DNA of 64,000 nt from positions 145,837 to 209,836 of the IMG/VR virus record IMGVR_UViG_3300008111_000002, one strand, 5' to 3'. Position numbers and translations under genes: made by a program. Each line of letters begins with the position of its first letter. Positions within the stretch are counted from its first letter, which is position 1. Under the pieces are notes generated by a model. The model was not told where the DNA came from. It saw nothing but the letters and a program-made list of their open reading frames with translations, and ran no database searches. Positions 43,664 to 59,946 of the stretch are shown one piece after another.

Positions 43664-43741
43664 TTAGTAGGGGTATGCTGCGATGGCTATCATTACCATT
43701 GCTGTCAAGTACAACCAACCAATGCTTATACGCTTTTGCAT
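43664..43741 (-). CDS. 25-aa hydrophobic peptide
   Basis: MQKRISIGWLYLTAMVMIAIAAYPY, SD AAGGAG, directly under the promoter at 43783-43811. Confidence 0.5.
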   Translation of the reverse strand: MQKRISIGWLYLTAMVMIAIAAYPY

Positions 43742-43816
43742 TCTATCGCTCCTTGGTGTCACTGCGTTGTTGCAGTGTTTATAGTATACCCTCAGCTGCC
43801 CAAAATGTCAACCAAT

Positions 43817-44050
43817 TTACTCCGGTTTGAACACTAGATATTTGTGCTGTTTCAACAGCTGGATTGCCGCTCGGACCTCCCTGGCTCTGAGTTCCTGATA
43901 CTCTAGGTTCTCACGTGCGGCCTTCAGAGTCTGCTCCTCGTCCTGATGATTAAAGAAGTGGTGTGTGCTGATGTACCACCTCTTACCCTCGTCTATGATC
44001 ATCTTTATGGTGCCAAGGTTCTTGTACTGCTGGATCTCATTGACTTTCAT
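43817..44050 (-). CDS. hypothetical protein
   Basis: 77-aa ORF. Confidence 0.55.
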   Translation of the reverse strand: MKVNEIQQYKNLGTIKMIIDEGKRWYISTHHFFNHQDEEQTLKAARENLEYQELRAREVRAAIQLLKQHKYLVFKPE

Positions 44051-44127
44051 AGTGGCTTCTTTCTAGAATAAAAAAGCCCGGGGAGTCCCCTCAACCCGGG
44101 CAAGGGGATCCAATCCCCGGAGCAACC

Positions 44128-44310
44128 TTAACGATATCCCTTTTGACGTATCATCAGCGTGGCCACCCACATCAAGGCCACACCCACTAGGCTGACTGCT
44201 AGACTGCACAGCAGATCGTAATCCGTAGTGCTCTGCTCAATGCCGCCTACCCCGCCTGCGGCTAGGATGATACCCATGAATACAAAAAATGCTATGACTC
44301 GATCTGACAT
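44128..44310 (-). CDS. small two-TM membrane protein
   Basis: SD AAGGAG, own promoter, two hydrophobic helices. Confidence 0.6.
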   Translation of the reverse strand: MSDRVIAFFVFMGIILAAGGVGGIEQSTTDYDLLCSLAVSLVGVALMWVATLMIRQKGYR

Positions 44311-44547
44311 GTTCTGCTCCTTTGTTTAACTGTTTACAGTATAGCTTCTCCGGCCCAACCTGTCAACCAAAATTTAATTTAATCTGATTGATCTCTCGGA
44401 CCCGGCCCCGAGGTTTCTTCTGCAGATAGAACGCGAATCCTACGCGAAAGATCTTAACGAAATGCAGTCCGCCTACTCGCTTGTATGAAATCATCTGATC
44501 GCTCCTTGATTGAAAGGGGACTTACGCTGTCGCTGCCCCGAAACTGT

Positions 44548-44844
44548 TTAATAAACTTCGTCTGCGTAACCGTAGTCTTCGTCTGTGCCGTAGCCTGCGC
44601 TGGCCATTGCTGAATCAAAATCTCCGTCCATGCTTTCGTCCGGAGCACCCCAGGCGCACTCACGTTCCTGTGCGTTGGTCAACTCCCAATCTTCCTGAAT
44701 CTTTGCCTTGGCCAACTCCACGTCCCCGCCGCACAGTTCCAGCACATCGTTATAATCTGCTGCGTCCCAGCACTCGGCAACCCAGTGGCCGCCTGCTTCG
44801 TAGTTGTCCATTGCGAACTGTTGCAGTTGTTGGATTTTGCTCAT
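44548..44844 (-). CDS. acidic hypothetical protein
   Basis: SD AAGGAG, promoter with leader hairpin. Confidence 0.65.
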   Translation of the reverse strand: MSKIQQLQQFAMDNYEAGGHWVAECWDAADYNDVLELCGGDVELAKAKIQEDWELTNAQERECAWGAPDESMDGDFDSAMASAGYGTDEDYGYADEVY

Positions 44845-44923
44845 TTTGGGCTCCTTTGTTTAGTTCACTGCGTTTGTGCAGTGTCTAAAGTATAGCGCAG
44901 GTTGTCCAATTTGTCAACCAAAA

Positions 44924-45211
44924 TCAGCAGCGATTTGTCTGGTAGGGTTTTCTTTGATTTTTAGGGAGGTGTCCCGCGCACATCTTTTCAGCGGCACGAT
45001 CCCAGTGCGGAACCTGAGCGATCAAACTTTCTCCAGGCTTTGGATCCCACGGGCGGTCACGAGGATCTCTACGATTCTCTGCCACGATGGTTTCTAAGGC
45101 TGCACAGCCTGTTAATGCACAGAGGATGAGTGCTGTACCGCACCACCTGCCTGCTGATGATCCCAAAGTAGCTTTCTGGTTACCAGCGTGTTGACCTTGT
45201 TCTCTAGCCAT
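44924..45211 (-). CDS. possible lipoprotein (start uncertain)
   Basis: ALILCALTGC lipobox-like segment. Confidence 0.35.
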   Translation of the reverse strand: MAREQGQHAGNQKATLGSSAGRWCGTALILCALTGCAALETIVAENRRDPRDRPWDPKPGESLIAQVPHWDRAAEKMCAGHLPKNQRKPYQTNRC

Positions 45212-45375
45212 TTCAGTTCCTCTTCTGTGAGTGTGTCAGTGTCCTGCTCGCCCTGCAGTACCTTAATTATAGCTTGGGTTTGATCCTGTGTCAAGCTGTG
45301 ATATTCACTTTCAACCCACTGAGTCAACTGCCGTCCCAGCTGCTGAGTTCTTCCTATCTTGCGCCAATCATTCAT
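45112..45375 (-). CDS. hypothetical protein
   Basis: 87 aa, coupled to upstream gene. Confidence 0.5.
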   Translation of the reverse strand: MNDWRKIGRTQQLGRQLTQWVESEYHSLTQDQTQAIIKVLQGEQDTDTLTEEELKWLENKVNTLVTRKLLWDHQQAGGAVQHSSSVH

Positions 45376-45745
45376 TTGAGGTTGCCTTGATTAATTCATT
45401 GCCCTCGACTATGACCAAACGCACATTGTTCATCTTGCTCTTGAGATCATCTATAAGGCTGTCACGATCACGGCCTTGGCCAAGGAATGAATCATCATCC
45501 TTGCGAAAGGCGTAGAGCTGACCTTGGTGCTGCTCTAGAGTTACTTCAATGACTGTGAGTTCATCTTCGGGGGTGGGTTCTGTCTCGAGTTCATACTTCT
45601 TCATCTGAGCCTTGAGCTGCTGCTCAGTGATGCCCATGTCTCGCATTATGGACAACATGGTGAAACGAGAAAATGCGGCATGTAGTCTCCATCCTATTGC
45701 TACGCCCAGGACCAAGACCAAAATCGTTAGAGTTGCATCATCCAT
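45368..45745 (-). CDS. N-terminally membrane-anchored hypothetical protein
   Basis: MDDATLTILVLVLGVAIGW; TAAATA upstream on the minus strand. Confidence 0.6.
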   Translation of the reverse strand: MDDATLTILVLVLGVAIGWRLHAAFSRFTMLSIMRDMGITEQQLKAQMKKYELETEPTPEDELTVIEVTLEQHQGQLYAFRKDDDSFLGQGRDRDSLIDDLKSKMNNVRLVIVEGNELIKATSNE

Positions 45746-45806
45746 AATATTATTTAATCTATTTGTGTGTATAGTGCGGGCAGCGGGGCCTTGGGCCCCA
45801 ACTGCC

Positions 45807-46151
45807 TCAATCCAGCCTAGAACCAGCGTAGGCTTGGAATCCGTATTTCTTAAACACCTGTGCTGCGGCCTCTGCGCCTGCTTCCAGTGTGTCCACATTC
45901 TGGCAACCAAACTTACTTGGGTTCCACATCTGCAGTCCCCCTGAGTAGGCTGGGCGGATATCGCATTCTTTCAAGGCCTTGCCCAACTTGGTATTTCCCT
46001 TGACGCCGTGGATGGTAACCCAGGCGAAGCCACAGGCAAACTGATCCTGACCGCCCAACCTCTCTTGGAAGAACTTGGCTGCTGCCTGATGGGCTGCGGT
46101 CTGTGCCTCTTGAACCACTGCAGGGATCTGCTCTGGAGTTACTGTGATCAT
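45807..46151 (-). CDS. conserved-looking phage hypothetical protein
   Basis: CGFAWV...Q.V...EAGAEAAA.V...GSRLD pattern. Confidence 0.65.
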   Translation of the reverse strand: MITVTPEQIPAVVQEAQTAAHQAAAKFFQERLGGQDQFACGFAWVTIHGVKGNTKLGKALKECDIRPAYSGGLQMWNPSKFGCQNVDTLEAGAEAAAQVFKKYGFQAYAGSRLD

Positions 46152-46273
46152 TGTGCGGTCTCCTTCATGATGGTCTGTGTCTTGCCCACGGCCTTGTCAA
46201 TTGCTGAGGCCACGCCCGAGATACCAACTGTGGCCACGAACATGCCTGCCACGAACGCTATCAAGATTTTCAT
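46148..46273 (-). CDS. 41-aa signal/TM peptide
   Basis: MKILIAFVAGMFVATVG...; ATGA overlap with next gene. Confidence 0.55.
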   Translation of the reverse strand: MKILIAFVAGMFVATVGISGVASAIDKAVGKTQTIMKETAQ

Positions 46274-46371
46274 CGCTCACTCCTTGTTGTCTAAGTGTTT
46301 ACAGTATACTACCTTGCCTGCCCTTTGTCAACCAAAATAAAGACCCTGCTGTGTGCAGGGCCTTTGCTTAG

Positions 46372-46626
46372 TTAATTTACAATTATAATGTTATTTGTTG
46401 CTAGTTGCTGTTTTGCTGATTGTAATGCTTTGTTAATTGCTTGTGCTTTTTGTTGTGCAGTGTCTGTAATATTGCAAATGTCCCCGGTAGCGTAAACTGC
46501 GCTGCGTTGTGTTATGTGACTGTTATTGCAGAAGCTTACTAAAATGCGTAGTGTTTTTAGCTTTTTGTTTTGTACAATTTTAGCAAAAGCTTTTTGTGCA
46601 AGTATTGCGTTAGCGTAAGTTTGCAT
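46372..46626 (-). CDS. hypothetical protein, compositionally biased (Q/A/K/N/I; no Glu, Pro or Trp)
   Basis: SD AAGGAG, own promoter and terminator. Confidence 0.6.
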   Translation of the reverse strand: MQTYANAILAQKAFAKIVQNKKLKTLRILVSFCNNSHITQRSAVYATGDICNITDTAQQKAQAINKALQSAKQQLATNNIIIVN

Positions 46627-46698
46627 TGTTGCGCTCCTTTTTGTTTAACAGTGTGTATATAATAGCACCAGCTGTCCAAAAAGTCAACCAAAATGTTC

Positions 46699-46725
46699 AA
46701 TAACCCGGCACTGCGCCGGGTTATT
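46699..46725. terminator. intrinsic terminator
   Basis: AATAACCCGGC-actgc-GCCGGGTTATT perfect 11-bp stem. Confidence 0.75.
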
Positions 46726-46733
46726 GCTAACAG

Positions 46734-47009
46734 TTACGCATACAAGTAATTGTCGGTGCAATAGTGTACAGTTTTATAAAACTTGCTTTGTGCGTCGGTG
46801 TACATGTGCATAATTGTGTCGCAAAGTTGGACTGCATTTTTATTTTGCATAAACTGTACAAGTGCTGCGTAAATTGTAACAATGTCGGTGTGTTGCTCGG
46901 CGCAGACAGTGTTGTCGGCGTTGACGTCGACAGTGCGTAAGTATTTTGCAATGTCGGCTTGCAAAAGTTGTACAATAATTGCTACGTCGGCGTTAGTAAC
47001 TTTTTGCAT
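46734..47009 (-). CDS. hypothetical protein, compositionally biased
   Basis: ATG after GGAG (MQKVTNADV...). Confidence 0.6.
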   Translation of the reverse strand: MQKVTNADVAIIVQLLQADIAKYLRTVDVNADNTVCAEQHTDIVTIYAALVQFMQNKNAVQLCDTIMHMYTDAQSKFYKTVHYCTDNYLYA

Positions 47010-47139
47010 TGTTAGCTCCGGTAGTTGCACTGCGTTTTGCAGTGTTTAAATTATAGTACCAAAACGCCGGACTGTCAACCAAAAAATTAGTTGTTAAAAA
47101 AGCAACCGGGTCAGTTGGGGGGCGTGTGCCCCCCTCCCC

Positions 47140-47619
47140 TTACTCTGCAGTTACCACGCTGCCTAGTTTGATGTTAAACACAATGCTGTCGTCCCCCGCC
47201 CTAAACTCGCTTGCCAGTGCCGCTGCCTGCGCCTCATCCCTAGTAATCTCTACACCGTTGCGTGTGTAGCGTGGCGCTTTGCGTTCCGCAGTCTTGTCCA
47301 TTGTGCATCGCACATAGTATTCGCCCTTGTGTGCGATAATGTAGGGGAATACAGCCCACTCGCCCCATGGCAAACCTGCATTCTCTGCTGGCAGTTCGCC
47401 AGTTGCTCGCTTCTCAATCACTTCCTCAATCTCGTCGTATACCTGTCCGATGATTGCGGTAAACTCTGAACGCTTAACAATAGCGTCCTGTCCCTTGCGT
47501 ACCTTCAACATACGCTCCGTGACAAACTTGACTGGCTGTTGCTTCTTGCTCAACACCAAGTCCAACAGTTGTTGTGTGTTGTTGTCTGTGCCCTGAACTA
47601 CTAGTTGTGCTATTTGCAT
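47140..47619 (-). CDS. hypothetical protein
   Basis: 159 aa, SD AAGGAG, promoter. Confidence 0.65.
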   Translation of the reverse strand: MQIAQLVVQGTDNNTQQLLDLVLSKKQQPVKFVTERMLKVRKGQDAIVKRSEFTAIIGQVYDEIEEVIEKRATGELPAENAGLPWGEWAVFPYIIAHKGEYYVRCTMDKTAERKAPRYTRNGVEITRDEAQAAALASEFRAGDDSIVFNIKLGSVVTAE

Positions 47620-47843
47620 TTGTTGCTCCTTAGTTGCCTGCGTATCGCAGTATCATTAGTATATGGCCAGCACACCAAAATGTCAACCAAAATATCAAAT
47701 GTCCCATCAGTCCGTAGGGTTATTCATCATGTTCGTTCATCGTCATCATGCAGACATTCTAACACCGTTCGTCCATTTGGTCAAGCCAAAAAAAAGCCCT
47801 GAGCACGTAGCCCAGGGCCTGCCAATCCCGGGAGCGAATCGGG

Positions 47844-48140
47844 TTAGGCAGCAACAGTTGCCGCAGCAGCAGTACTTGCTGTAGCTGTGGCAGGGTTCTT
47901 CTTCGCGGTGTAGGCGATCGCAGCTTCCACAGCAGCATTGCCAGCACCAAAGCCACGAGCCACGAGTTCTTGAACGATCTCACCTTTGGTCATTGGCTTG
48001 CCAAGATCAACCAGCTCAACACCAGTGTGTCCGTTCTTGGCCAGAATCTTGATACGCATCTGGTCATTGGCGAAACGCAGCTTGGTCTTGCCGTTAAGGG
48101 TTGAAACACCTGCTACACTAAAACGCTTGTCAGTCGACAT
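47844..48140 (-). CDS. hypothetical protein with Ala/Thr-rich tail
   Basis: 98 aa, SD GAGAGG, promoter and terminator. Confidence 0.65.
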   Translation of the reverse strand: MSTDKRFSVAGVSTLNGKTKLRFANDQMRIKILAKNGHTGVELVDLGKPMTKGEIVQELVARGFGAGNAAVEAAIAYTAKKNPATATASTAAAATVAA

Positions 48141-48385
48141 AATAATTACCTCTCTGTGTGTGAATAAAAACTACCAACCAATTTGATAGCATTTTGAGTA
48201 TACTACCAAACCATTTGTCCGTCAACCAATTATTTTTCCAAATTGTTTGGAATTGGCAACAATTGCAATAGTTCTTCCACCCTGCGATGATCTGCATCGC
48301 CCGCCCCACCGCATTCGATGGAGAAGGCAAAATTAAATGTTCTTGCCATGCTGTTTCCCTATATAGTCGTATATAGCAGCGGGGC

Positions 48386-49012
48386 CTACTGGTCCACTAA
48401 CTTCAAGGCCTCGCCGCCTTCTTTGGTCCAGCGATAGAGATCCTCATCCATACGCTCTTCCTCTTCGTATTCAGCCAGGCTCTCGCTGATGGCAAAGAAC
48501 TCATCTAGATCTTCGGGCAAGGTATCCTTGGCACCCTGACTGTCACCCCAATCTGAGTAGCAGTCATCACAGCCGTTGTCCCATACACCAGCAAAGCACA
48601 TACCTGGTTCGTAGTAGTATGCACGAACTGTGTAGCCCTGTTCAACCAACTCCTCATAGACTCCTGTGGGAGGTGCCCAGGCTGAATCAAAACTTGCAGT
48701 CATCAAGTTACCATCAGGATGAATATCCAAGGTGCCATCCTGGCCACCTACATCCCATTTAGTTCCCCAACGGCCAGACTGGAATGAATACCAATCACTG
48801 TGACCAAACTTCTCTATGTTGCTCTTAACTCGTGCTTCGTGTGCGGCCTGTTCGTCTCCTCCCACACTGCCTGCCACGGTTTCAGTCAACTCCTTGGGTG
48901 TAGGAATCACATGGTGACAGAACTCGCCACGCTCGTAGGCTTCAGCCAGCGCCTTGATCTTGGCAGGATCCTCATGACCAATTTCTATAAAGTTGTTGCA
49001 CCAATTAGGCAT
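48386..49012 (-). CDS. DUF1281/YubB-like protein
   Basis: MPNWCNN, WY......WGTKWD, FDSAWAPP, YYEPG..FAG. Confidence 0.75.
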   Translation of the reverse strand: MPNWCNNFIEIGHEDPAKIKALAEAYERGEFCHHVIPTPKELTETVAGSVGGDEQAAHEARVKSNIEKFGHSDWYSFQSGRWGTKWDVGGQDGTLDIHPDGNLMTASFDSAWAPPTGVYEELVEQGYTVRAYYYEPGMCFAGVWDNGCDDCYSDWGDSQGAKDTLPEDLDEFFAISESLAEYEEEERMDEDLYRWTKEGGEALKLVDQ

Positions 49013-49013
49013 A

Positions 49014-49241
49014 CTAGGCTCCTCGAATCATGTTTAACAAACGATCGTTCTGTGCGTCTTGATATTGACGTTGCATCACTGTGTCGAAGCGATCAATCAT
49101 ACGATCCTCAATCCTCTGTGCATTCATGTCAAAGATCTGACTCACGGTCTTGTAGATCTTGTGCTGTGCCCACGGAGTAGTCTCGGGGTCCTCTAGCACG
49201 GCCATTGCACGACGAATGTAATCAAACTCTTGAGGTGTCAT
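49014..49241 (-). CDS. hypothetical protein
   Basis: ATG after GGAGCGAAC. Confidence 0.6.
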   Translation of the reverse strand: MTPQEFDYIRRAMAVLEDPETTPWAQHKIYKTVSQIFDMNAQRIEDRMIDRFDTVMQRQYQDAQNDRLLNMIRGA

Positions 49242-49306
49242 AGTTCGCTCCTGTTTAGTTAGTGTGTATATAATAACACACACTAACCAAACTGTCAACC
49301 AAAATC

Positions 49307-49666
49307 TTATACAACCTTGACCTTGCTATAGCCTGCGGACAACAATGCCAGAGCATCTTGTGCAGTTGCTGCCATAGTCACTACACGCTTACGGTTAATA
49401 TGGCCAGTAGTTGGATAGTAACGACCACCGCCATTGCCGATGGCATTGAAGTTACCACTACCAGGATTGAATCGATTATTGTTTCCCAGAATCCAACGAT
49501 TGAGGCGACCGTCCTTGATTGATCGAAGGTGATCACTGTTTTCGAGAATGTTCATTCTCTTAGACATATCCTCGCTCCAGTAACCAAGAGCGTTGGCCAC
49601 GTCTTTAGTATAGCACAGGGGATGAGCAGCGACGTATTCGCAAATCATCTGATTTTGACTTTTCAT
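49307..49666 (-). CDS. hypothetical protein, possible N-terminal winged HTH
   Basis: ICEYVAAHP..YTKDVANALG...SKRMNILE. Confidence 0.5.
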   Translation of the reverse strand: MKSQNQMICEYVAAHPLCYTKDVANALGYWSEDMSKRMNILENSDHLRSIKDGRLNRWILGNNNRFNPGSGNFNAIGNGGGRYYPTTGHINRKRVVTMAATAQDALALLSAGYSKVKVV

Positions 49667-49732
49667 GGGTTCTCCATAAAGTGTTGTTTAGTTCAAACAG
49701 TATAACAGGGGGTTGCCCCCCTGTCAACCAAT

Positions 49733-50086
49733 TTATGCCTCTGCAAATGCCTCCAACGCTGCCTGTGCCGCACCGTCCAGCATTACGCCATCTTGTGCTT
49801 TAATCTTGTCTGCAGTTACCTTTATGCGGTATGCGTCCATCTCTGCAGTCTTTGCTTCCATAGCAGGCCACACTACGTCTTGCGGGTTAAGGTAAGCACC
49901 TGTGTAGTCTACCTTGTCCTCTTTCAGTGTAATCTCGCCTGCCTTAATGCCTTCAAACACCATGCCCCATGTAGGCTGTTGCGGACGGCCAGTAGGGCCA
50001 AACAGTTCCACTGCCTTTGCCTGCAGTTTCTCTGTTGCAATTTCATTCAAGCGACGGAGAAAGTAATTGCGTTGTTCCTGTTCCAT
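49733..50086 (-). CDS. hypothetical protein
   Basis: 117 aa, SD AGGAG, hairpin promoter. Confidence 0.65.
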   Translation of the reverse strand: MEQEQRNYFLRRLNEIATEKLQAKAVELFGPTGRPQQPTWGMVFEGIKAGEITLKEDKVDYTGAYLNPQDVVWPAMEAKTAEMDAYRIKVTADKIKAQDGVMLDGAAQAALEAFAEA

Positions 50087-50108
50087 AATACGCTCCTAAA
50101 AAGTCTGT

Positions 50109-50160
50109 CACTGCAAAATTGCAGTGTGTGTATATTAACACACACTGCCCAATCTGTCAA
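50109..50160 (-). promoter_or_regulatory. promoter with -10 inside a 10-bp inverted repeat, plus leader hairpin
   Basis: CACTGC-aaaatt-GCAGTGTGTG-tatattaa-CACACACTGC...TGTCAA. Confidence 0.85.
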
Positions 50161-50165
50161 CCGTT

Positions 50166-50477
50166 TTATGCCTCAAAATTTTCTACAATCATAATACGTC
50201 CAGCCAGCAAGTCTTCTACCAGTTGCACTGCTCGCCGCTCTGTGCCGCCAATGTGCCAGTCATAGTGCCCCATGGGAGTGCCATACTCTTTCCAGTCGTA
50301 AATCGTTGCTACTGTGCCGTCGCTAAACTCAATGCACCACTCCTGCGTGGTCTTGTCGCCACCGCCCATCCCCTCCCCCAGCAAGTCCTGCAGCTTTGCA
50401 AAGGTGGTTCCTACATAGCCCTGCAGATGTGTGCCGTTGAACTTTTCTGCAAAGTAATCGTAAACTCGTGCTTCCAT
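50166..50477 (-). CDS. conserved-looking phage hypothetical protein
   Basis: LQGY..T..KL..LLG....DKT..EW.IEF.DG.VATIYDWK.....WHIGG. Confidence 0.65.
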   Translation of the reverse strand: MEARVYDYFAEKFNGTHLQGYVGTTFAKLQDLLGEGMGGGDKTTQEWCIEFSDGTVATIYDWKEYGTPMGHYDWHIGGTERRAVQLVEDLLAGRIMIVENFEA

Positions 50478-50495
50478 GTTGCGCTCCTAGTATGT

Positions 50496-50547
50496 CACTG
50501 CGTTATTGCAGTGTGTGTATAGTAACACACACTGCCCAAAATGTCAA
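50496..50547 (-). promoter_or_regulatory. promoter with -10 inside a 10-bp inverted repeat, plus leader hairpin
   Basis: CACTGC-gttatt-GCAGTGTGTG-tatagtaa-CACACACTGC...TGTCAA. Confidence 0.85.
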
Positions 50548-50550
50548 GTG

Positions 50551-50766
50551 TTAAATTGTGCTGTACTTTCTGTATTCCTTGCCGCCCACGTTGCTGTACC
50601 ACAGCCCGTTAGTTTTTTTGTAATAACCCTGCTTGTACCAGTTTTTAATCTGTGTTGCGTGTTGCTGTCTGCCCTGCTCTGCAATAGCTTGTTCCAACGT
50701 CATTGTAGCACCTGCTGCGTCTTGTGCTGCCTGCTGTGCTTGTTGTTGTGCGTGTAGTGCTAGCAT
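50551..50766 (-). CDS. hypothetical protein (no Pro)
   Basis: SD AAGGAG; Gln/Ala-rich. Confidence 0.6.
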   Translation of the reverse strand: MLALHAQQQAQQAAQDAAGATMTLEQAIAEQGRQQHATQIKNWYKQGYYKKTNGLWYSNVGGKEYRKYSTI

Positions 50767-50783
50767 AGCTTGCTCCTTAGTTG

Positions 50784-50835
50784 CACTGCGTTATTGCAGT
50801 GTGTGTATATTAACACACACTGCCCAAAATGTCAA
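50784..50835 (-). promoter_or_regulatory. promoter with -10 inside a 10-bp inverted repeat, plus leader hairpin
   Basis: CACTGC-gttatt-GCAGTGTGTG-tatattaa-CACACACTGC...TGTCAA. Confidence 0.85.
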
Positions 50836-50844
50836 CCAAAATGT

Positions 50845-51168
50845 TTATACTTCCATGCTTGCAAGTTCGTCTTCTTGCATACCCTGCTCTGTAAAGCGCA
50901 CACCAAACCCTAGTGCATCACTAATAGCACTTTCAAATGCACTGTCTGTGTATATGTCCCATGTGCTGTTGTGCGTTACATTAACCATAACGCTTACATT
51001 GTCGTCATAAGCATTTGTCACAATGCTAATGCCTGTCACACGCACTTGCCTGTCAGCCTCGCAGCCCCACAAGCCGTCGCCAGCTGTCCAAACAGTAAAG
51101 TCGCAGTCAAAGTCTTGTGCAGTGTAGTCGCCGTCAACCTCAAACCGTGTAAGTGTAAGTTTTTGCAT
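50845..51168 (-). CDS. acidic hypothetical protein (no Pro)
   Basis: SD AGGAG; 107 aa. Confidence 0.65.
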   Translation of the reverse strand: MQKLTLTRFEVDGDYTAQDFDCDFTVWTAGDGLWGCEADRQVRVTGISIVTNAYDDNVSVMVNVTHNSTWDIYTDSAFESAISDALGFGVRFTEQGMQEDELASMEV

Positions 51169-51242
51169 TGTGTGCTCCTGTGTGTCACTGCGTTAGTGCA
51201 GTGTGTATATAATAGCACCAGCTGTTCAAAATGTCAACCAAA

Positions 51243-51401
51243 TTATTCTGCGTAACCGTCTTCTTCCCAGCCCTCGTAGGTGGCATTAACTCCCGCAGAG
51301 TTTACATCAGTCATCCCAGCAATCTCGTCTGCTGCTTCTGCTGTGTCTGCTTCAACCTGTAAAGTATATGTTACAGTCTGTGTGTAATAAAATTTAGGCA
51401 T
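51243..51401 (-). CDS. small hypothetical protein
   Basis: ATG after AGGAGCGAG (MPKFYY...). Confidence 0.55.
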   Translation of the reverse strand: MPKFYYTQTVTYTLQVEADTAEAADEIAGMTDVNSAGVNATYEGWEEDGYAE

Positions 51402-51422
51402 CTCTCGCTCCTGTAAAATTAA

Positions 51423-51462
51423 ACAGCGTGTGTATAGTAACACACGCTGTCCAAACTGTCAA
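51423..51462 (-). promoter_or_regulatory. promoter with a covaried inverted repeat around -10
   Basis: ACAGCGTGTG-tatagtaa-CACACGCTGT...TGTCAA. Confidence 0.85.
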
Positions 51463-51467
51463 CCAAT

Positions 51468-51686
51468 TTAGGCAGGCTCTCCTGAGCGACCTTGATGAAC
51501 TCGGGCAGGTCCGCCGGCAGGCAGGTGGAGTTCGAGATCAGCTTCCATGACCACGTAATAGGCTTTGAGAACTTCTAGATTGTATTCATCGGGATTGGCC
51601 TTGATCGCCATCAGCTGCTCTGAAAAGGACTGATCTTTGGCATAGGCTTGAATTCTAATGATTTCGCTGGCTTTGGAAATGTCCAT
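51468..51686 (-). CDS. hypothetical protein
   Basis: SD AAGGAG, promoter. Confidence 0.55.
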   Translation of the reverse strand: MDISKASEIIRIQAYAKDQSFSEQLMAIKANPDEYNLEVLKAYYVVMEADLELHLPAGGPARVHQGRSGEPA

Positions 51687-51753
51687 TTGTTCGCTCCTTT
51701 GTTGCTATGTGTGTATTATAGCACTATGTGTCCAAAATGTCAACCAAAATAAA

Positions 51754-51779
51754 AGCTGTGGCATTTCTGCCACAGCTTC
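51754..51779. terminator. intrinsic terminator
   Basis: AAGCTGTGGCA-tttc-TGCCACAGCTT. Confidence 0.75.
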
Positions 51780-51838
51780 CTTAGTTGCTAAATCTTAATT
51801 AAAACTGTAAATTACGCCCTGTGCGCTCTCGCTTTTTA

Positions 51839-52090
51839 CTACGACTGTCGCAGCTCCTTGCGCTTGCGGATAATGGGCTTGTCTACTTTAACTGCAATTT
51901 TAGTCTTGCGGTAGTTAATGTGTATGCCTTGTGCGCTAAACACTTCCCCCAGCACTAGCTTCATACGCTCTGCGCGGAGTTTTTGCTTGTCTGTATACAA
52001 GCTAGCGTTGGCAATATTGCGCATACTTGCATCCTGCGCTGCCCACCACTTAACAGTTGCTTCTTTAGTATCCAGTTGCTTATAACGCAT
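51839..52090 (-). CDS. basic hypothetical protein
   Basis: SD AAGGAG, promoter with leader hairpin. Confidence 0.55.
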   Translation of the reverse strand: MRYKQLDTKEATVKWWAAQDASMRNIANASLYTDKQKLRAERMKLVLGEVFSAQGIHINYRKTKIAVKVDKPIIRKRKELRQS

Positions 52091-52265
52091 AACACGCTCC
52101 TTGGGTTACACTGCACATCGCAGTATCAATACTATAACACCAGTTGTCCAATCTGTCAACCAATAAAAACCCAGTAGGCAGTAAGGACAACGGCGTAGAT
52201 CACAAGTGCGGGGATGACCTGTGACATTGTGTCACTAACAATCCATTCCGCGTATTCTTTATCGT

Positions 52266-52718
52266 TCATGTGGGGATATCTCCTGTATGTATAGATTTAA
52301 GAAATGCAGTTAGTGTCCTACTACGTCCAACCATTAACTTCACTGGCCAGTTGTAGTTGACATGATAGTCCGTAAGGGTCATGACCACACTGTGTTTGAC
52401 TCCACCTTTGGGGCCAAGTACCTTTACTTCGTAGCGTTCGCGATGATTCCACGTTTCTTTCTTATTGGCTGACTTAACTTTAGTGGCAATGATAGTTTTG
52501 CCATTGTGAGTTGCTTGATACCCGCTAGAGGTAACCTCATGTGGAATCTGGTGCAGCATCTCACTGAGAGTGATCAGAGCAGCACGTTCTTGCTGCCTCT
52601 TGAGACGACCACCGATGCTGACTAGATCACTGGCTGTTAGGCCGCTGAGTAAGGCCATTGTGAGTATGCGCTCACGTGCATCTTTTTGCTGTTCAGTTAA
52701 ACGTGCCATCGTGTTCAT
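52266..52718 (-). CDS. hypothetical protein
   Basis: 150 aa in operon. Confidence 0.6.
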   Translation of the reverse strand: MNTMARLTEQQKDARERILTMALLSGLTASDLVSIGGRLKRQQERAALITLSEMLHQIPHEVTSSGYQATHNGKTIIATKVKSANKKETWNHRERYEVKVLGPKGGVKHSVVMTLTDYHVNYNWPVKLMVGRSRTLTAFLKSIHTGDIPT

Positions 52719-53001
52719 CCAATAAACGTGTTACTACTTTGTTCTTTCTAGTATATGTCTTTTTGACTTTCTTGTCAACCTTTTTGGTCTTAGGTTCAAA
52801 TTCTCTAAAGACATAATACTCTATCAAACAGTTGCGAATCATAATCGTGAGATCCAGGCCGCTGTTCTCAGGGACAATGAATCTGACCGGACATTTACCC
52901 CAACCTCCATATTCTAGAAAGTCGTAGTACCACTTCCTATGCTGCTTGTTAGCGGGGTCAAAGGCCACAAGCGGCCGGGCGAGGTATTCTAGTTTGCTCA
53001 T
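52693..53001 (-). CDS. hypothetical protein
   Basis: RPLVAFDPANKQHR.WY..F...WG.CP.RF. Confidence 0.6.
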   Translation of the reverse strand: MSKLEYLARPLVAFDPANKQHRKWYYDFLEYGGWGKCPVRFIVPENSGLDLTIMIRNCLIEYYVFREFEPKTKKVDKKVKKTYTRKNKVVTRLLDEHDGTFN

Positions 53002-53186
53002 GCGCCCCAGAATGGACTATATGGTTCGTCACATTCTACCTTAAAGTTCAGACCAGTATCTGAAATCAGCTGCTGTACGTGGGGCATGTCGTAGTCGTTC
53101 ATGACATGAATAGTTTCGCCATTCATATAGACATCATAGATGCCCATGTCCTCAAGCGAAGATAGGATCTCTTTGGGTTTGATCAT
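52998..53186 (-). CDS. hypothetical protein
   Basis: 62 aa, coupled. Confidence 0.5.
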   Translation of the reverse strand: MIKPKEILSSLEDMGIYDVYMNGETIHVMNDYDMPHVQQLISDTGLNFKVECDEPYSPFWGA

Positions 53187-53505
53187 TTGTACCTTTCAAT
53201 GCATTCATAATTCGTAGACGATCAAGATGTTCCCTAGTCGTCATTGGTTCAACCACCTCACGGACTGCTGCGCTAGTTGCCAACATGCCCTTGAGGAACT
53301 GTTGCATCTCCTTGGCCACCAGATGCTGCGATAAGTTGTTGCCTCCGTTGTAAAGGCAGTACAATCGCTGATAGCCAGGGCGATAACTCTCTATGTGATA
53401 GTTGGTCCCCAGGCTATCGTTCACCTGGGTAACCATCTCACGTATACCGTACTTGTTAATCCTCATGGTCATACCAGTTGCGAGGAAGCTTGTCTTCTTG
53501 CTCAT
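53152..53505 (-). CDS. hypothetical protein
   Basis: 117 aa. Confidence 0.5.
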   Translation of the reverse strand: MSKKTSFLATGMTMRINKYGIREMVTQVNDSLGTNYHIESYRPGYQRLYCLYNGGNNLSQHLVAKEMQQFLKGMLATSAAVREVVEPMTTREHLDRLRIMNALKGTNDQTQRDPIFA

Positions 53506-53940
53506 CCAAGTAGTCGTTGTACTCTTGCTCGTACTCCTGCCACTCTTCGTCCGTCATATCGTAGGTTTCAGGGTTGTTGAAGCCATCCATATTAGTCTCC
53601 TAGACTGTGTTGAACATGATCACAGTATACGACAGAGTCACGACTCTGTCAACCTATTTCACTTAGAAATCCCTGCAGCTTGTTCTCGGGAACATTGCGC
53701 AGCAGTTCTTCGATCGCAGTGAGGTCACCGCTCTCAACGTCAATGAGGATCTGCTCGAGGGCAGCATCAATCAAACCTTGATCTAGTTCCATGATGATTC
53801 CTTTCAGTCTGTGTGTGGAGGAAGGTCGTAGTCCGCTGGGTCTGCGGGAAACCTAGGTATGTTGTTGGGGTCCTTCATACAAACTCCTATGTTGTTTAGT
53901 GTTCGTATTATATGATAGAGTCACGACTCTGTCAAGAACT

Positions 53941-54513
53941 TTATTTGAAGCCCATGACCATGTAACGGTTAAAGCCCCAGTCAGGATATTGAAATCGTTT
54001 AGTACCTGTGAACAGTTGTTCCTTCAAAGGCCATGCAGCAGCAAAAGCCTCGTCTGACTCATAGCTGGCCACGTGATCTTCATGAGGCATATCGTTCCCT
54101 TGCAGCACTGTGAATGTATTCTCAGGGATGTTGTCGAACCACTGACGTGACTCTATGTGCTCTACGCTGGTGTTGATTATAATACTAGGCTGATGTCCCA
54201 ATGCCCACCAGTTGATGTTGTTGACGTCGTGCGTAACAGCTGAGAACTCTCCCTGCCAGTGCCACAGACGATTAACGTGTACCGCGATAGATTCGCATTC
54301 AGGATCTATGTCCCAACTGCGAACATGCTGGATGGGGATTCTACTTTGTGTGCGTAGGATGAAATTGGTAAGTGCATACCAGCCTGCGAAGATCTCTATC
54401 CTATGGCCCTGCAGCGGGGCCTGTATGTCATTGATGGAGAGTACCTGACTCAGCTTCTCAGCCAGCCAAATCTTACTGCCAATTTGACCGGATGAGAAGC
54501 TGTCCCAATTCAT
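53941..54513 (-). CDS. class I SAM-dependent methyltransferase-like protein
   Basis: GQI.SK.WL, IFAGWY, SWDIDP, INTSVEH. Confidence 0.6.
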   Translation of the reverse strand: MNWDSFSSGQIGSKIWLAEKLSQVLSINDIQAPLQGHRIEIFAGWYALTNFILRTQSRIPIQHVRSWDIDPECESIAVHVNRLWHWQGEFSAVTHDVNNINWWALGHQPSIIINTSVEHIESRQWFDNIPENTFTVLQGNDMPHEDHVASYESDEAFAAAWPLKEQLFTGTKRFQYPDWGFNRYMVMGFK

Positions 54514-55712
54514 TAGGCCTTCTCGTCGTAGATAACAGTCTGACCAAAGGGTGCTTCGTTATTACTGCCCTTGACAATGAACAAGGTATCGCAGTAGTCT
54601 TCATCACCCCAACCACCGCAGGGGTAGCCGTCTGTAAACATAATGAACTTCTTGGGCTGGATGTCGTTCTCTTTCATAAACTGCCAGTTGGCTTCAAAGT
54701 CCGTACCACCACCGCCTTGGAGATCATAAGTCAACAGTTCGTCGCCGTTGTCCTGCGTAATCTTCTGCGGATTGTAAACGTCTGTGTCAAAGCACCAGAT
54801 GTGAATGTTGTAGTCTGAATATTGATCCATGATGCCCTTGACTTCACTCAAGAACACCTTAGCATCAGCATCGCCAATTGAACCACTCATATCCAATGCA
54901 ATGGCCACGTCAATGGTCTCATCGTTCTTCATGCCTGGAAGGATAGCGCCACTGTGCATTGACTTACGATTAGGGCGAGTAAAGGAGTAGTCGTTGCGGA
55001 TGATGCTTTGAATGTTCATACGGATCAACTCACGCCAGTTCATCTTAGGCTCAGTGAGGTCTTTGATCAAACGCTGAATGCCCAACGGAGTCTTACCTGC
55101 ACCTGCGGCCGCGGCACTCTGAACCATAGCCTGCTTGATCTCATCGCGAATAGCCTGTGCTTCTTCTTTGGTAAGAACTGGAGCACCCTTGCCATCCTTA
55201 CCATCTTTGCCTGCACCCTGACCTTCGTGCTCTTGCTCGTTGATATGCTGGTCCAACAATTCGCCCAACTGATCCAGACTAATGGTCTTGACGTTCTTCA
55301 TCAGGTCGTCGTAGATCTCTTCCCAGGCCATGCCGCGATACTTGTTGTCTTGGCAAATCTTAACTTCAGTGATACGCTCGCCAATGCGGTCGTCTACAAG
55401 GATCTGGTTCACTGCGAAGTCTTGTGCGATGTTAGACATCTGACGATCACGCGAACCTACACGACCAAAGTGATCAAACACACAATGGCAAATCTCATGT
55501 GCGAACAAGAACTCTAGTTTCTTAACGCTGAGCTTCTCAACGAACTTGGTGTTGTAGTAGAAGTTGCGTCCGTCAGTTGCGGCTGTAGGGCACCAGTCGT
55601 CTGCACACTTGATCTGCATACGAGTTGCCATGTTACCAAAGAACGGTTGCTTCAGCAGAAGCCCTACACGAGCGGTAATGAGCTTTTCAACGATTGCGGG
55701 ATCTTCTTTCAT
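54513..55712 (-). CDS. DUF2201-type protein: N-terminal HExxH metallopeptidase-like domain plus C-terminal vWA domain
   Basis: TAATDG, AHEICH; MIDAS DMSGS, GGGGTDF, FTDG. Confidence 0.88.
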   Translation of the reverse strand: MKEDPAIVEKLITARVGLLLKQPFFGNMATRMQIKCADDWCPTAATDGRNFYYNTKFVEKLSVKKLEFLFAHEICHCVFDHFGRVGSRDRQMSNIAQDFAVNQILVDDRIGERITEVKICQDNKYRGMAWEEIYDDLMKNVKTISLDQLGELLDQHINEQEHEGQGAGKDGKDGKGAPVLTKEEAQAIRDEIKQAMVQSAAAAGAGKTPLGIQRLIKDLTEPKMNWRELIRMNIQSIIRNDYSFTRPNRKSMHSGAILPGMKNDETIDVAIALDMSGSIGDADAKVFLSEVKGIMDQYSDYNIHIWCFDTDVYNPQKITQDNGDELLTYDLQGGGGTDFEANWQFMKENDIQPKKFIMFTDGYPCGGWGDEDYCDTLFIVKGSNNEAPFGQTVIYDEKA

Positions 55713-55826
55713 ATGGGCTCCTTTGTCTAAGTATGTATATTATATGGCCTAGTGCCTATTCTGTCAACCAAAAAAGGTGAGTGAGGGACCCTGAACAAGT
55801 CCCCCACTCTAGCCATGGTGGAGGTC

Positions 55827-56903
55827 TTAATTCTCCATGGCCTTCAAAACATACTTACCGTATTTCTTGTGGAACTCATCAAAGTTCTTCATCTTTGTTG
55901 CGTCCAACGGCAAGTTGTAGTTAGTAAGGGCAGTCTTAGCACCCATCACAACCAACTCTGTTGGGAAGTTATCCATCATGTAGCGGAAGAAGCAGTCCGC
56001 CTGACTGTCCCAATTAGTAGCCTTCTTGTCTGCTTGATCTTTGAGCTCGTAGCACAAGCTCACAGTCAAGGAATACATGGCTGACACTTCCTTAATCTGC
56101 AGGTCCTTAACCTTGCCGCTAAGGATGTCGGGAGCCTTAGGCAGTTTACCAGCAATCTTACGATGTGCCATAAACTTAACAGCCAAGCCGTCACCAATAG
56201 CACCTGCAACCAAGTCAGTGAGCGTGTCAGTGTCAGTGTCATCGTCCTGCAGGAGATCGCTGACGAACACCCATGAACGAGGAGTTGCAAAAGCCTTAGA
56301 GCTGGACTTGGGATCAAAGTCATACAAGTCCTGCTTGGCAAAGCCTACATAACCAACAACCTCAGGATGGATCTTGTTAGCAGTAGCCCACTCTTGGAAA
56401 TCGTCAAAGTCAACTTTGGCTTCCAAGTGCAGGAAGCGGTTGGCCAACGGAGCAGGCATACGATAGGTAACACCCTTGTCGCCATCGCGGTTACCAGCCG
56501 CTACAATGTCCACGCCCTTGGGCAGGATGTATTGTCCTACACGACGGTTCAGAACCAACTGGTAGGCGGCCGCTTGGACTGCGGGAGGAGCGGAGTTGAG
56601 CTCGTCCAAGAAGATGATTGCACGGCTGTCTGGGTCAGTGGGCAATTCTGCTGGGGGTGCCCAAACCATTGTGCCTTGTTCTGCGTTGTAATAAGGGATA
56701 CCTTTGATGTCTGTAGGTTCCCAGAGTGGTAGACGAATATCAATTACTTCTCTCCCCTCGGAGTCGCCAATCTGCTTGACGATGTCACTCTTACCAATAC
56801 CGGGCGGGCCCCACAGGAACACCGGACGGCGCTTTTGAATTGCTTTTTGAATTGCCTTCTTGGCCTTCTTAGGACCAACCTGGCGAATAGAATTATCAGA
56901 CAT
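55827..56903 (-). CDS. MoxR-like AAA+ ATPase
   Basis: GPPGIGKS, FLDELN, AAGNR, LANRF, TPRSW. Confidence 0.9.
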   Translation of the reverse strand: MSDNSIRQVGPKKAKKAIQKAIQKRRPVFLWGPPGIGKSDIVKQIGDSEGREVIDIRLPLWEPTDIKGIPYYNAEQGTMVWAPPAELPTDPDSRAIIFLDELNSAPPAVQAAAYQLVLNRRVGQYILPKGVDIVAAGNRDGDKGVTYRMPAPLANRFLHLEAKVDFDDFQEWATANKIHPEVVGYVGFAKQDLYDFDPKSSSKAFATPRSWVFVSDLLQDDDTDTDTLTDLVAGAIGDGLAVKFMAHRKIAGKLPKAPDILSGKVKDLQIKEVSAMYSLTVSLCYELKDQADKKATNWDSQADCFFRYMMDNFPTELVVMGAKTALTNYNLPLDATKMKNFDEFHKKYGKYVLKAMEN

Positions 56904-56972
56904 TTAAGACCTCCAAAAAAAGTGTTTTGCTACTTGCTACTGACTGTGTCGTTCAGTTCATATATTATGCGT

Positions 56973-57623
56973 TCAAACTGCTGTCTTGTCAACGACAATC
57001 TTCACATAATTCAACTGTGTTGTATTGTCGCCACGCACGTTCTTGATCTTGCCCTTGATGGTATACTCACCGCCCACAGGCAGCTCTTTGTTGAACCAGA
57101 AGTCCACGAAGCTGTTGTTCATACGAGCGGTGATATGATATTTGTTGTAGTGAATGCTATAGCGTTGTTTGATTACCTGAATGTCACCCTCCACACGCTG
57201 ACCATCAGTGCCTGTTAGCTGATCGCTTTCACGGATCTGATCCATGAGCTGCTTGTTGGCATGATCCTTGAGCATGACGTAGGGGAGGCAGCTGACCACG
57301 CTGAGCTGATAGCTGTCTTTGGCCGAATCAAACTCCTCACGCTGAGTCAGCTTGAGCGCAGTGGTCTGAAAGTCGTTGATCTTGCCACTGAGCTGCAACA
57401 GAAGGTAACCAGTGAAGTGACGGCGAACTTCGCGGCCTTCAATGATATCATTCTCAGTTACGGGATTGGGTTCTTTGCCCATCAACCAGAACTTGACCAA
57501 GACCTTGTTGCAGCGAGTCTCGATCTTCTGAGTCTCAGTGTTGTAGACGTCGCTCTTGAAGTAGCCGCCGTTGATACGGTGTGCTGCAACTGCTGTACCC
57601 CAAACAAGATCTGCTGTTAGCAT
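56973..57623 (-). CDS. hypothetical protein, possible C-terminal OB fold
   Basis: C-terminal beta pattern ...YTIKGKIK...TTQLNYVKI. Confidence 0.5.
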   Translation of the reverse strand: MLTADLVWGTAVAAHRINGGYFKSDVYNTETQKIETRCNKVLVKFWLMGKEPNPVTENDIIEGREVRRHFTGYLLLQLSGKINDFQTTALKLTQREEFDSAKDSYQLSVVSCLPYVMLKDHANKQLMDQIRESDQLTGTDGQRVEGDIQVIKQRYSIHYNKYHITARMNNSFVDFWFNKELPVGGEYTIKGKIKNVRGDNTTQLNYVKIVVDKTAV

Positions 57624-57757
57624 TATCGCTCCTTGTGTCTAAGTATGTATATTATATGACCTCTTTTGGATTTTGTCAACCAAAAGAAAAGCCGCACTAG
57701 GCGGCTCAAAGAAATTCCCCGGGAGCGAATCGGATCTTTTACTTTGTGTAGTTCCTC

Positions 57758-58284: not shown

Positions 58285-58286
58285 AA

Positions 58287-59903: not shown

Positions 59904-59946
59904 GATTCGCTCCTAAGTAGTTTAAAGGAAGTACTAGTATACGATC

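What the first reader, a model, noticed from the sequence alone, without database searches (positions are those of the whole stretch)
49258..51462. Promoter -10 boxes placed in the loop of covarying 10-bp inverted repeats
Seen: GCAGTGTGTG-[8 nt with -10]-CACACACTGC at 50121, 50508 and 50796. ACAGCGTGTG-..-CACACGCTGT at 51423 carries two compensatory changes, and GTTAGTGTGT..ACACACTAAC at 49258 has others. Covariation favours a structure over a fixed operator sequence. One arm is shared with the leader hairpin, so the two folds are mutually exclusive. Inference: supercoiling- or ssDNA-dependent cruciform promoters, or hairpin recombination sites.
Basis: partly seen in the sequence, partly recalled or inferred. 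Interest (0 to 1): 0.74.

Follow-up and report, generated by a model that had tools for sequence, protein, structure and literature searches.

The report
Phage early promoter/stem-loop cassettes (PeSL-like)
Five early promoters of an uncultured freshwater jumbo phage have their -10 box in the loop of an 11-12 bp covarying inverted repeat, which is real but matches a composite promoter/stem-loop cassette (PeSL) already described in T4-type phages, not a new kind of cruciform promoter.

Summary
On the minus strand, five near-consensus sigma-70 promoters (TTGACA, 17 nt, TAnTAT) at 49.2-51.5 kb have 11-12 bp inverted-repeat arms directly flanking the -10 hexamer. Three share identical arms and two have different arms with compensatory changes. 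They belong to an array of about 30 co-oriented promoter cassettes, each ahead of a small orphan gene, in a PA5oct-related freshwater jumbo phage. Among 996 distinct cassettes from 161 related loci, only 8 in 3 genomes have this palindrome, and their arms covary (pairwise p 0.0005-0.01). Within the same cassette subfamily, the hairpin can sit inside the spacer, around the -10, or be absent. The upstream spacer has evolved to match a conserved leader at least three times. The same architecture is present in RB49 (covarying 6-7 bp arms around TAATAT/TAAGAT) and in Aeromonas phage 25 (13 bp arms around TAATAT). It was published as the PeSL subclass 'overlapping the -10 box', read as a terminator/attenuator for upstream transcription and as a recombination point. 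That is my best explanation. A DNA cruciform role is untested and not excluded. Verdict: a new member of a known kind, of modest interest.

The parts
43741..62215 (-). Array of about 30 co-oriented early-promoter cassettes. Each has an A/T-rich lead-in, (GG)TTGACA, a 17-nt spacer, TAnnnT, a leader, AGGAG and a start codon, ahead of a mostly small orphan gene. It lies at the end of a 209.8-kb viral contig.
   Evidence: No Pfam family in 10 of the ORFs.
51401..51467 (-). Cassette W2. The -35 is at 51457-51462 and the -10 (TACTAT) at 51434-51439. Arms are 51440-51450 and 51423-51433 (ACAGCGTGTGT / ACACACGCTGT), followed by a T-rich tail TTTAATTTT. The ATG is at 51401.
   Evidence: The RNA stem is 15 bp including 2 G.U. 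It is the only one of the five picked up as terminator-like.
50766..50840 (-). Cassette W1a. The -35 is at 50830-50835 and the -10 (TAATAT) at 50807-50812. Arms are 50813-50823 and 50796-50806. The leader hairpin CACTGC-N6-GCAGTG spans 50784-50801.
50477..50552 (-). Cassette W1b. The -35 is at 50542-50547 and the -10 (TACTAT) at 50519-50524. Arms are 50525-50535 and 50508-50518. The leader hairpin spans 50496-50513.
50086..50165 (-). Cassette W1c. The -35 is at 50155-50160 and the -10 (TAATAT) at 50132-50137. Arms are 50138-50148 and 50121-50131. The leader hairpin spans 50109-50126.
49241..49303 (-). Cassette W3. The -35 is at 49293-49298 and the -10 (TATTAT) at 49270-49275. Arms are 49276-49287 and 49258-49269 (12 bp with one G.T). 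There is no leader hairpin.
   Evidence: The sense-strand RNA stem is 17 bp with 2 G.U. The DNA hairpins are worth -10 and -8.3 kcal/mol.
49699..49727 (-). Neighbouring cassette of the spacer class. A G-run/C-run hairpin (ACAGGGGG-gcaa-CCCCCTGT) overlaps the -35 and spacer.
   Evidence: Same design as the RB49 GN-loop-CN PeSLs.
51715..51780 (-). Neighbouring cassette of the upstream class. A canonical intrinsic terminator (13-bp stem plus T-run) is followed directly by ttttggTTGACA.
51168..51242 (-). Non-palindromic paralogue (TATTAT) between W2 and W1a. It has the same leader as W1 but a non-complementary spacer (5 of 12 pairs).

Best explanation
The five sites are composite promoter/stem-loop cassettes of the PeSL type. 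A strong host-RNA-polymerase (sigma-70) early promoter, a Shine-Dalgarno site and a stem-loop are packed into the roughly 60-80 nt between two small early genes. In this compact subclass there is no room upstream of the -35. The stem-loop is therefore built from the only free positions: the 3' half of the spacer and the start-site/leader region. This leaves the sequence-constrained -10 hexamer as the loop. The inner pairs come for free from the extended -10 (GTGT) and the ACAC start region. I infer that the hairpin acts as RNA on transcripts reading through from the co-oriented promoter upstream, as an attenuator/terminator or a 3'-end protector. This insulates tandem early units from one another. 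I also infer that the repeated cassettes serve as homology for shuffling the orphan genes. Shown here: the anatomy, the rarity, the covariation, the floating hairpin position, and the identity of design with RB49 and Aeromonas phage 25. Inferred: promoter activity, the RNA level of action, and termination.
For: Array of about 30 cassettes with 10-12 of 12 consensus matches, versus 23 expected promoter-like sites and 63 found. The nearest cultured relative by terminase is PA5oct at 54% identity. PA5oct depends on host RNAP and has TTGAC/TATAATA promoters. Cassettes in the window carry a strong hairpin upstream of the -35 with a T-run, in the spacer, or around the -10. The five palindromic ones start 10-15 nt after the upstream stop codon and have no other hairpin. 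Of 996 distinct cassettes, 8 have at least 9 of 12 pairs around the -10, against a bulk mean of 3.3 and a bulk maximum of 8. Permutation expects 0.86. Covariation: 6 pairs with double changes, and 0 of 500 shuffles reach the score. Pairwise p values are 0.005, 0.01 and 0.0005. The same TATTAT/leader subfamily has a non-complementary spacer in L139, a spacer hairpin in L145 and L169, or -10-enclosing arms in L055. RB49 PeSLs read directly show 6-7 bp covarying arms around TAATAT, TAAGAT, TAGCAT and TATCAT. Aeromonas phage 25 has 13-bp arms around TAATAT. The PeSL papers describe five stem-loop positions, including 'overlapping the -10 box', and one spacer-class stem-loop without a U-tract terminated as well as rrnB T1. 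Sense-strand RNA stems are extended by G.U to 15-17 bp in W2, W3 and L031. Spacer-class hairpins fold better on the sense strand in 89% of cases. Gene order differs among relatives, with similarity breakpoints inside cassettes and in register.
Against: Four of the five have no U-rich tail, so they are not canonical intrinsic terminators. Contigs from RNA libraries cross two of the cassettes completely (49211-49362 and 50746-50901, depth about 3). This means either incomplete termination or DNA carry-over. The L055 pair folds better on the antisense strand, so the G.U asymmetry is not uniform. Seven of 8 palindromic cassettes have a non-consensus TAnTAT hexamer, against 3% overall. RB49 and phage 25 show the same trend. 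An RNA-only role does not predict this link between hairpin and -10 quality. No transcript ends were mapped.
Confidence: 0.6

Rival explanations
1. DNA-level switch. Under negative supercoiling the 28-bp palindrome extrudes as a cruciform with the -10 hexamer single-stranded in the loop. This either silences the promoter, as in the Horwitz and Loeb 1988 promoter, or pre-melts a weak -10 for sigma-70.
For: The arms are perfect, 11 bp, with an A/T-only or A/T-rich 6-nt centre. Both DNA strands fold at about -12 kcal/mol with z-scores of -5 to -7. The -10 is exactly centred in all 8 cassettes. The hexamers of this class are non-consensus but keep T-12, A-11, A-8 and T-7 in three phage groups. Precedents exist for supercoil-extruded promoter hairpins in N4 and for cruciform repression.
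Against: The -35 and -10 are at canonical 17-bp duplex spacing, so no structure is needed for function. The centring is explained by the promoter's own GTGT/ACAC consensus and by lack of space. The hairpin position floats within the same cassette subfamily. G.T pairs that extend the stem only on the sense strand occur in W2, W3 and L031. No extrusion data exist.
Confidence: 0.12
2. No selected function. The perfect palindromes are by-products of templated mutation (intrastrand template switching that 'corrects' quasi-palindromes) and of gene conversion among repeated cassettes, acting on a promoter consensus that is already partly self-complementary.
For: The non-palindromic paralogue at 51237 differs from W1 by a cluster of 5 changes confined to the upstream arm, all of which create pairs. 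The same holds for W3 versus L139. Three copies are identical in a 45-bp core although their flanking genes are unrelated. The class is rare, 8 of 996.
Against: There are at least three origins in one clade plus the same design in RB49 and Aeromonas phage 25. Pairing persists through further divergence between W1, W2 and L031. Other positions in the same cassettes carry clearly functional terminators, so a hairpin is an expected cassette part.
Confidence: 0.15
3. Operator for a dimeric phage or host repressor that shuts off a subset of early promoters by binding across the -10.
For: The sites have dyad symmetry over the -10. The inner half-sites (TGTGT ... ACACA) are similar among the window copies.
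Against: The outer arm positions change on both sides while keeping complementarity, and the L055 arms have a different sequence. A protein would conserve half-site sequence, not pairing. The inner bases are already the family's extended -10 and start-region consensus.
Confidence: 0.05

Closest known systems
PeSLs (promoter-early stem-loops) of T4-type phages RB49/phi1, PST/T4 and nt-1/KVP40 (Arbiol et al. 2010, PMC2839356; Comeau et al. 2014, PMC4122927)
   Same: Both are repeated intergenic cassettes in a region of small orphan genes. Both have an A/T-rich lead-in, a near-consensus sigma-70 promoter, a stem-loop whose position varies (upstream, over the -35, in the spacer, over the -10, downstream), and an SD plus start codon. 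In RB49 I read the -10-enclosing subclass directly. It has covarying arms (GGGGGTA/TACCCCC, GGGAGTA/TACTCCC, GGGGATA/TATCCCC, GGGTGTA/TACACCC) around non-consensus hexamers. Gene order differs among close relatives at cassette boundaries.
   Different: The host phage is an uncultured PA5oct-related freshwater jumbo phage, not a Straboviridae member. The arms are longer (11-12 bp versus 6-7 bp) and GT/AC-rich instead of G-run/C-run. The subclass is rare here (0.8%) but was called one of the commonest in phi1. Three copies share an arm with a separate leader hairpin. Terminator activity and mini-circles were not tested here.
Aeromonas phage 25 early promoter between nrdD and ORF059c (DQ529280; also Aes508, Aes012, phiAS4)
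   Same: TTTACA, a 17-nt spacer, then TAATAT, with a perfect 13-bp inverted repeat enclosing the -10. It is 88% identical to W1 over 33 nt, including the GCAG...CTGC arms.
   Different: The loop is 10 nt (gtgt plus hexamer). It is a single site in the stretch examined. The BLAST E-value is 0.5, so the sequence likeness may be convergent.
Phage N4 early promoters for virion RNA polymerase (PMC4496689)
   Same: An inverted repeat at a phage early promoter centred near -11. The stem identity is free as long as pairing is kept.
   Different: N4 hairpins have 5-7 bp stems with a 3-nt loop, are read by a phage-encoded virion RNAP with SSB, and lack sigma-70 boxes. Here perfect sigma-70 boxes are present and no virion RNAP was found.
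Cruciform-repressed E. coli promoter of Horwitz and Loeb 1988 (as cited in PMC6060812)
   Same: A sigma-70 promoter with an inverted repeat across the -10 region.
   Different: That was a laboratory-selected promoter shown to respond to superhelicity. Here nothing is measured.

Membership tests
PeSL cassette | Repeated intergenic motif concentrated in a hyperplastic region of small, co-oriented orphan genes | tested here: met
   About 30 cassettes lie only at contig 187.5-207.6 kb, all on the minus strand. Ten ORFs have no Pfam family.
PeSL cassette | Near-consensus sigma-70 promoter (TTGACA-N17-TATAAT) | tested here: met
   10-12 of 12 matches with a 17-nt spacer in every cassette. Activity was not measured.
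PeSL cassette | A/T-rich stretch upstream of the -35 | tested here: met
   Lead-ins such as acattttgg, cataaaacgg and ctaaattgg.
PeSL cassette | Stable stem-loop at one of five positions, including overlapping the -10 box | tested here: met
   Upstream, -35/spacer and -10-enclosing classes are all present in the window. The design is the same in RB49 when read directly.
PeSL cassette | Shine-Dalgarno site and start codon at the 3' end | tested here: met
   AGGAG lies 5-9 nt before the ATG in all five.
PeSL cassette | Stem-loop terminates or attenuates upstream transcription | not testable with these tools
   Only W2 has a U-rich tail. RNA-library contigs cross two cassettes, but depth is about 3 and DNA carry-over is possible.
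PeSL cassette | Cassettes bound the units that are shuffled among close relatives | tested here: met
   Orthologues of the small genes sit in other orders and behind other cassettes. One metagenome joint reconstitutes an in-register 17-nt spacer. Recombination itself is not shown.
PeSL cassette | Host is a T4-type phage | tested here: inconclusive
   The terminase matches T4-like phages below 60% identity. The nearest is PA5oct at 54%.
N4-type hairpin promoter | Short stem (5-7 bp), 3-nt loop, no sigma-70 boxes | tested here: not met
   11-12 bp stems with a 6-nt loop equal to the -10, and a perfect -35 at 17 bp.
N4-type hairpin promoter | Phage-encoded virion RNA polymerase | tested here: inconclusive
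   The only giant ORF (4643 aa) matches a virion structural protein family and no RNAP. The contig is about 60% complete.
Intrinsic (Rho-independent) terminator | G+C-rich stem followed directly by a U-tract | tested here: not met
   Not met for W1 (three copies) and W3. W2 is partly met with TTTAATTTT.
Dimeric-repressor operator | Conserved half-site sequence | tested here: not met
   The arms differ among W1, W2, W3, L031 and L055 while staying complementary.
Supercoil-responsive cruciform promoter | Extrusion at physiological superhelicity that changes transcription | not testable with these tools
   Only the hairpin energies of the separated strands could be computed.

The most novel reading that the evidence does not exclude
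In several unrelated phage lineages a subclass of host-RNAP early promoters keeps a weakened -10 hexamer (TAnnAT) exactly in the loop of a covarying inverted repeat because the DNA hairpin or cruciform itself tunes the promoter. It would do so either by presenting a pre-melted -10 to sigma-70 or by silencing the promoter at high superhelical density. That would make these natural sigma-70 counterparts of the N4 hairpin promoters.
Probability: 0.1. Interest if true: 0.7.

Novelty: new member of a known kind. Interest (0 to 1): 0.3.

Why it matters
It extends PeSL-type cassettes from cultured T4-type phages to an abundant, uncultured clade of freshwater jumbo phages. There they appear to organise and shuffle the early orphan-gene region. 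It also gives a clean natural series for testing what a stem-loop around a -10 box does: the same leader occurs with no hairpin, a spacer hairpin, or a -10-enclosing hairpin. The link between this subclass and non-consensus -10 hexamers in three phage groups is not explained by the published terminator model. It is the one point worth an experiment.

Tried and rejected
- Megablast and blastn of 49-52 kb against cultured phages found no match.
- Two IUPAC scans of IMG/VR for the palindromic promoter gave nothing, or only two unrelated sequences without extended arms.
- Rfam found only the two tRNAs.
- Pfam found nothing for ten small ORFs.
- An antisense promoter in the palindrome was rejected by eye. 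The plus strand has TATATT or TATAAT but no -35 and no TG.
- A strand-asymmetry test (sense versus antisense RNA energy) gave a mixed result for the -10 class: six cassettes favour sense and the two L055 cassettes favour antisense. It does not settle RNA versus DNA.
- Population variants in four public runs showed none inside the palindromes among those listed. Assembler contigs simply break at the repeated copies.
- A review of cruciforms (PMC3176155) held nothing on promoters of this type.
- An N4-like virion RNAP was looked for through the largest ORF and not found.
- A repressor operator was rejected because of the covariation.
Full report
**The observation**

The variants at 51423 and 49258 are as described. 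All genes here run on the minus strand. On that strand each site reads (GG)TTGACA, 17 nt, then TAATAT, TACTAT or TATTAT.

The arms are 11 bp, so the loop is exactly the -10 hexamer. At 49258 the arms are 12 bp with one G.T. An AGGAG and an ATG follow 30-45 nt downstream. In the three identical copies the last six bases of the downstream arm (CACTGC) also pair with a GCAGTG further on. This forms a 6-bp leader hairpin worth -9.1 kcal/mol. Whenever the upstream arm is present, the 11-bp stem wins in the predicted fold.

**Context**

The window is the last 64 kb of a 209.8-kb IMG/VR contig estimated to be 60% complete. It encodes a tail sheath, a terminase and helicases. The nearest cultured relative by terminase is Pseudomonas jumbo phage PA5oct at 54% identity. 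PA5oct depends on the host RNA polymerase and has TTGAC/TATAATA promoters. Near-identical DNA is present in many lake and freshwater metagenomes.

The five sites belong to an array of about 30 near-consensus sigma-70 promoters. All are on the minus strand and confined to window 41.6-62.2 kb. Each precedes a mostly small gene with no Pfam family. The cassettes carry strong hairpins at different places:
- Canonical terminators with a T-run directly upstream of the -35: 61156, 57707, 55809, 51780, 46365.
- Hairpins over the -35 or in the spacer: 53935, 53652, 49727, 59427.
- Hairpins around the -10: the five sites of the finding.

The five start 10-15 nt after the upstream stop codon and have no other hairpin.

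**How unusual it is**

I fetched 161 related loci (2.16 Mb) through two conserved neighbouring genes and extracted 996 distinct cassettes. The number of complementary pairs among the 12 positions on either side of the -10 has a bulk mean of 3.3 and a bulk maximum of 8. A separate group of 8 cassettes has 9-12 pairs: the five in the window, two in L055 and one in L031. Permuting downstream arms among cassettes gives 0.86 cassettes with at least 9 pairs. A search for such palindromes around any TAnnnT, with no -35 required, returned only these eight plus one coding-region hit. So the class is real but rare, at 0.8%.

**Covariation**

On the alignment of the eight cassettes, 90% of cells pair and six pairs show changes on both sides. 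No shuffle of 500 reaches the covariation score. The set was chosen for being palindromic, so I also ran pairwise tests. They ask whether downstream changes fall opposite upstream changes with the complementary base. The results were p = 0.005 (W1 vs W2), 0.01 (W1 vs W3), 0.017 (W1 vs L031) and 0.0005 (W1 vs L055a).

Listing all cassettes with a TAnTAT hexamer showed how the palindromes arise. The leader (a[c/t]acaca...ctaac) is a conserved subfamily feature, and the spacer varies:
- Non-complementary in L139, which has the same leader as W3, and at window 51237, which has the same leader as W1.
- Folded on itself (ACAGGT-aaa-ACCTGT) in L145 and L169.
- Complementary to the leader in L055.

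The hairpin is therefore the recurrent feature and its position floats. The -10-enclosing version arose at least three times.

**What is known**

Arbiol et al. 2010 and Comeau et al. 2014 described PeSLs in T4-type phages. These are repeated cassettes in hyperplastic regions made of a strong sigma-70-like early promoter plus a stem-loop. [quoted passage not shown] G-T pairs occur in the stems. One spacer-class stem-loop terminated as well as rrnB T1. Recombination between cassettes shuffles orphan genes.

I read RB49 directly. Six cassettes have 6-7 bp arms flanking TAATAT, TAAGAT, TAGCAT or TATCAT. The arms covary (GGGGGTA/TACCCCC, GGGAGTA/TACTCCC, GGGGATA/TATCCCC, GGGTGTA/TACACCC), and one has a G.T in the sense orientation. 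A weak BLAST hit led to Aeromonas phage 25. There a TTTACA-N17-TAATAT promoter is enclosed by a perfect 13-bp repeat and resembles W1 at 88% over 33 nt. The window's 49727 cassette has the G-run/C-run spacer hairpin typical of RB49. The finding is therefore the published architecture in a new phage clade.

**Mechanism**

The promoter boxes are at canonical duplex spacing, so no alternative DNA structure is needed for initiation. The upstream arm is absent from the promoter's own transcript. It is present in read-through RNA from the co-oriented promoter 220-400 nt upstream, and no canonical terminator lies between 51780 and 49726. On the sense RNA the stems of W2, W3 and L031 extend to 15-17 bp through G.U pairs that the other strand cannot form. 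Spacer-class hairpins in the clade also fold better on the sense strand in 89% of cases. Together with the floating position, this makes an RNA-level role the best reading. That role would be attenuation, termination or 3'-end protection of read-through transcripts.

Several points weigh against it:
- Four of the five lack a U-tract.
- Two contigs from RNA libraries cross whole cassettes, though at depth about 3 and possibly from DNA.
- The L055 pair folds better on the antisense strand.

The exact centring on the -10 follows from constraint. The hexamer cannot be self-complementary, and the flanking GTGT (extended -10) and ACAC (start region) are already complementary.

**What remains open**

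Seven of the 8 palindromic cassettes have a non-consensus TAnTAT hexamer, against 3% of all cassettes, and all 8 have the TG extension. The RB49 and phage 25 examples also have non-consensus hexamers, while RB49 spacer-class cassettes have TATAAT or TATACT. A purely RNA-level role does not predict this.

It keeps alive, at about 10%, the reading that the DNA hairpin tunes the promoter. The precedents are N4 and the Horwitz-Loeb promoter. Both DNA strands fold at about -12 kcal/mol, but whether superhelical stress can pay for extrusion could not be computed here. A mutational origin by template switching and gene conversion is also plausible for how the perfect arms were made. The changes from the non-palindromic paralogues are clustered in the upstream arm only.

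**Recombination**

Orthologues of the small genes occur in other orders and behind ordinary cassettes in relatives. In metagenome contigs, similarity to the window breaks inside cassettes. One joint (51724 to 49287 plus 7 nt) reconstitutes an in-register 17-nt spacer in a more abundant relative. This fits cassette-bounded shuffling but does not show where crossovers occur.

**Verdict**

The interpretation as a new cruciform promoter is not supported. The element is a new member of the PeSL kind. Interest is 0.3.

Noticed in passing
window 43741-61125, minus strand (cassettes at 61125, 52159, 51237, 50835, 50547, 50160, 47686, 47078, 44917, 43811): A conserved leader hairpin, (C)ACTGC-N5-6-GCAGTG, sits at the predicted 5' end of the mRNA in about ten cassettes. 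It is a candidate 5'-terminal stabilising stem-loop. On the plus strand the same hairpins score as terminator-like.
   Followed up: partly
window cassettes at 51462, 50835, 50547, 50160, 49298; L055:17505 and 17789; L176 (RB49); L178 (Aeromonas phage 25): Cassettes whose hairpin encloses the -10 have non-consensus hexamers (TAATAT, TACTAT, TATTAT; in RB49 TAAGAT, TAGCAT, TATCAT). Other classes have TATAAT or TATACT. The ratio is 7 of 8 versus 31 of 996 in this clade. This is not explained by the terminator model.
   Followed up: partly
L178:2990-3045 (Aeromonas phage 25, DQ529280, between nrdD and ORF059c): A T4-type early promoter (TTTACA-N17-TAATAT) is enclosed by a perfect 13-bp inverted repeat and is 88% identical over 33 nt to the window's W1 core. 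The same hit appears in Aes508, Aes012, phiAS4, 50AhydR13PP and avDM4.
   Followed up: partly
window 46600-52500 laid on runs X14 and X18: A relative far more abundant than the window's strain in run X14 (depth 188 versus about 12) has a different gene order. There the 49307-type gene is followed by a cassette and then the 51468-type gene. Several other joints also fall in cassettes.
   Followed up: partly
window 48265/48266: A 75-nt insertion relative to the window is seen in one RNA-library contig (X19) and one DNA contig (X14). It is a strain polymorphism inside or next to the small ORF at 48130-48330.
   Followed up: no
window 61509-61675, minus strand: A tRNA-Leu(TAA) and tRNA-Met(CAT) pair is driven by its own cassette promoter at 61716. 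PA5oct lists adjacent Met(CAT) and Leu(TAA) tRNAs as well.
   Followed up: no
window 54513-56903, minus strand: An HNH endonuclease-like gene (399 aa, phrog_1314) and an ATPase (358 aa, phrog_1297) sit inside the early array. The ATPase has more than 590 relatives at 73-88% identity in IMG/VR, so the clade is very common.
   Followed up: no
G000:C1:77263-91191 (outside the window; L177): A 4643-aa ORF matches a virion structural protein family (phrog_10938) and a head-closure family.
   Followed up: partly
window 35355-36824, plus strand: A Nol-like carbamoyltransferase (phrog_1601), an auxiliary metabolic gene, lies next to the DnaB-like helicase.
   Followed up: no
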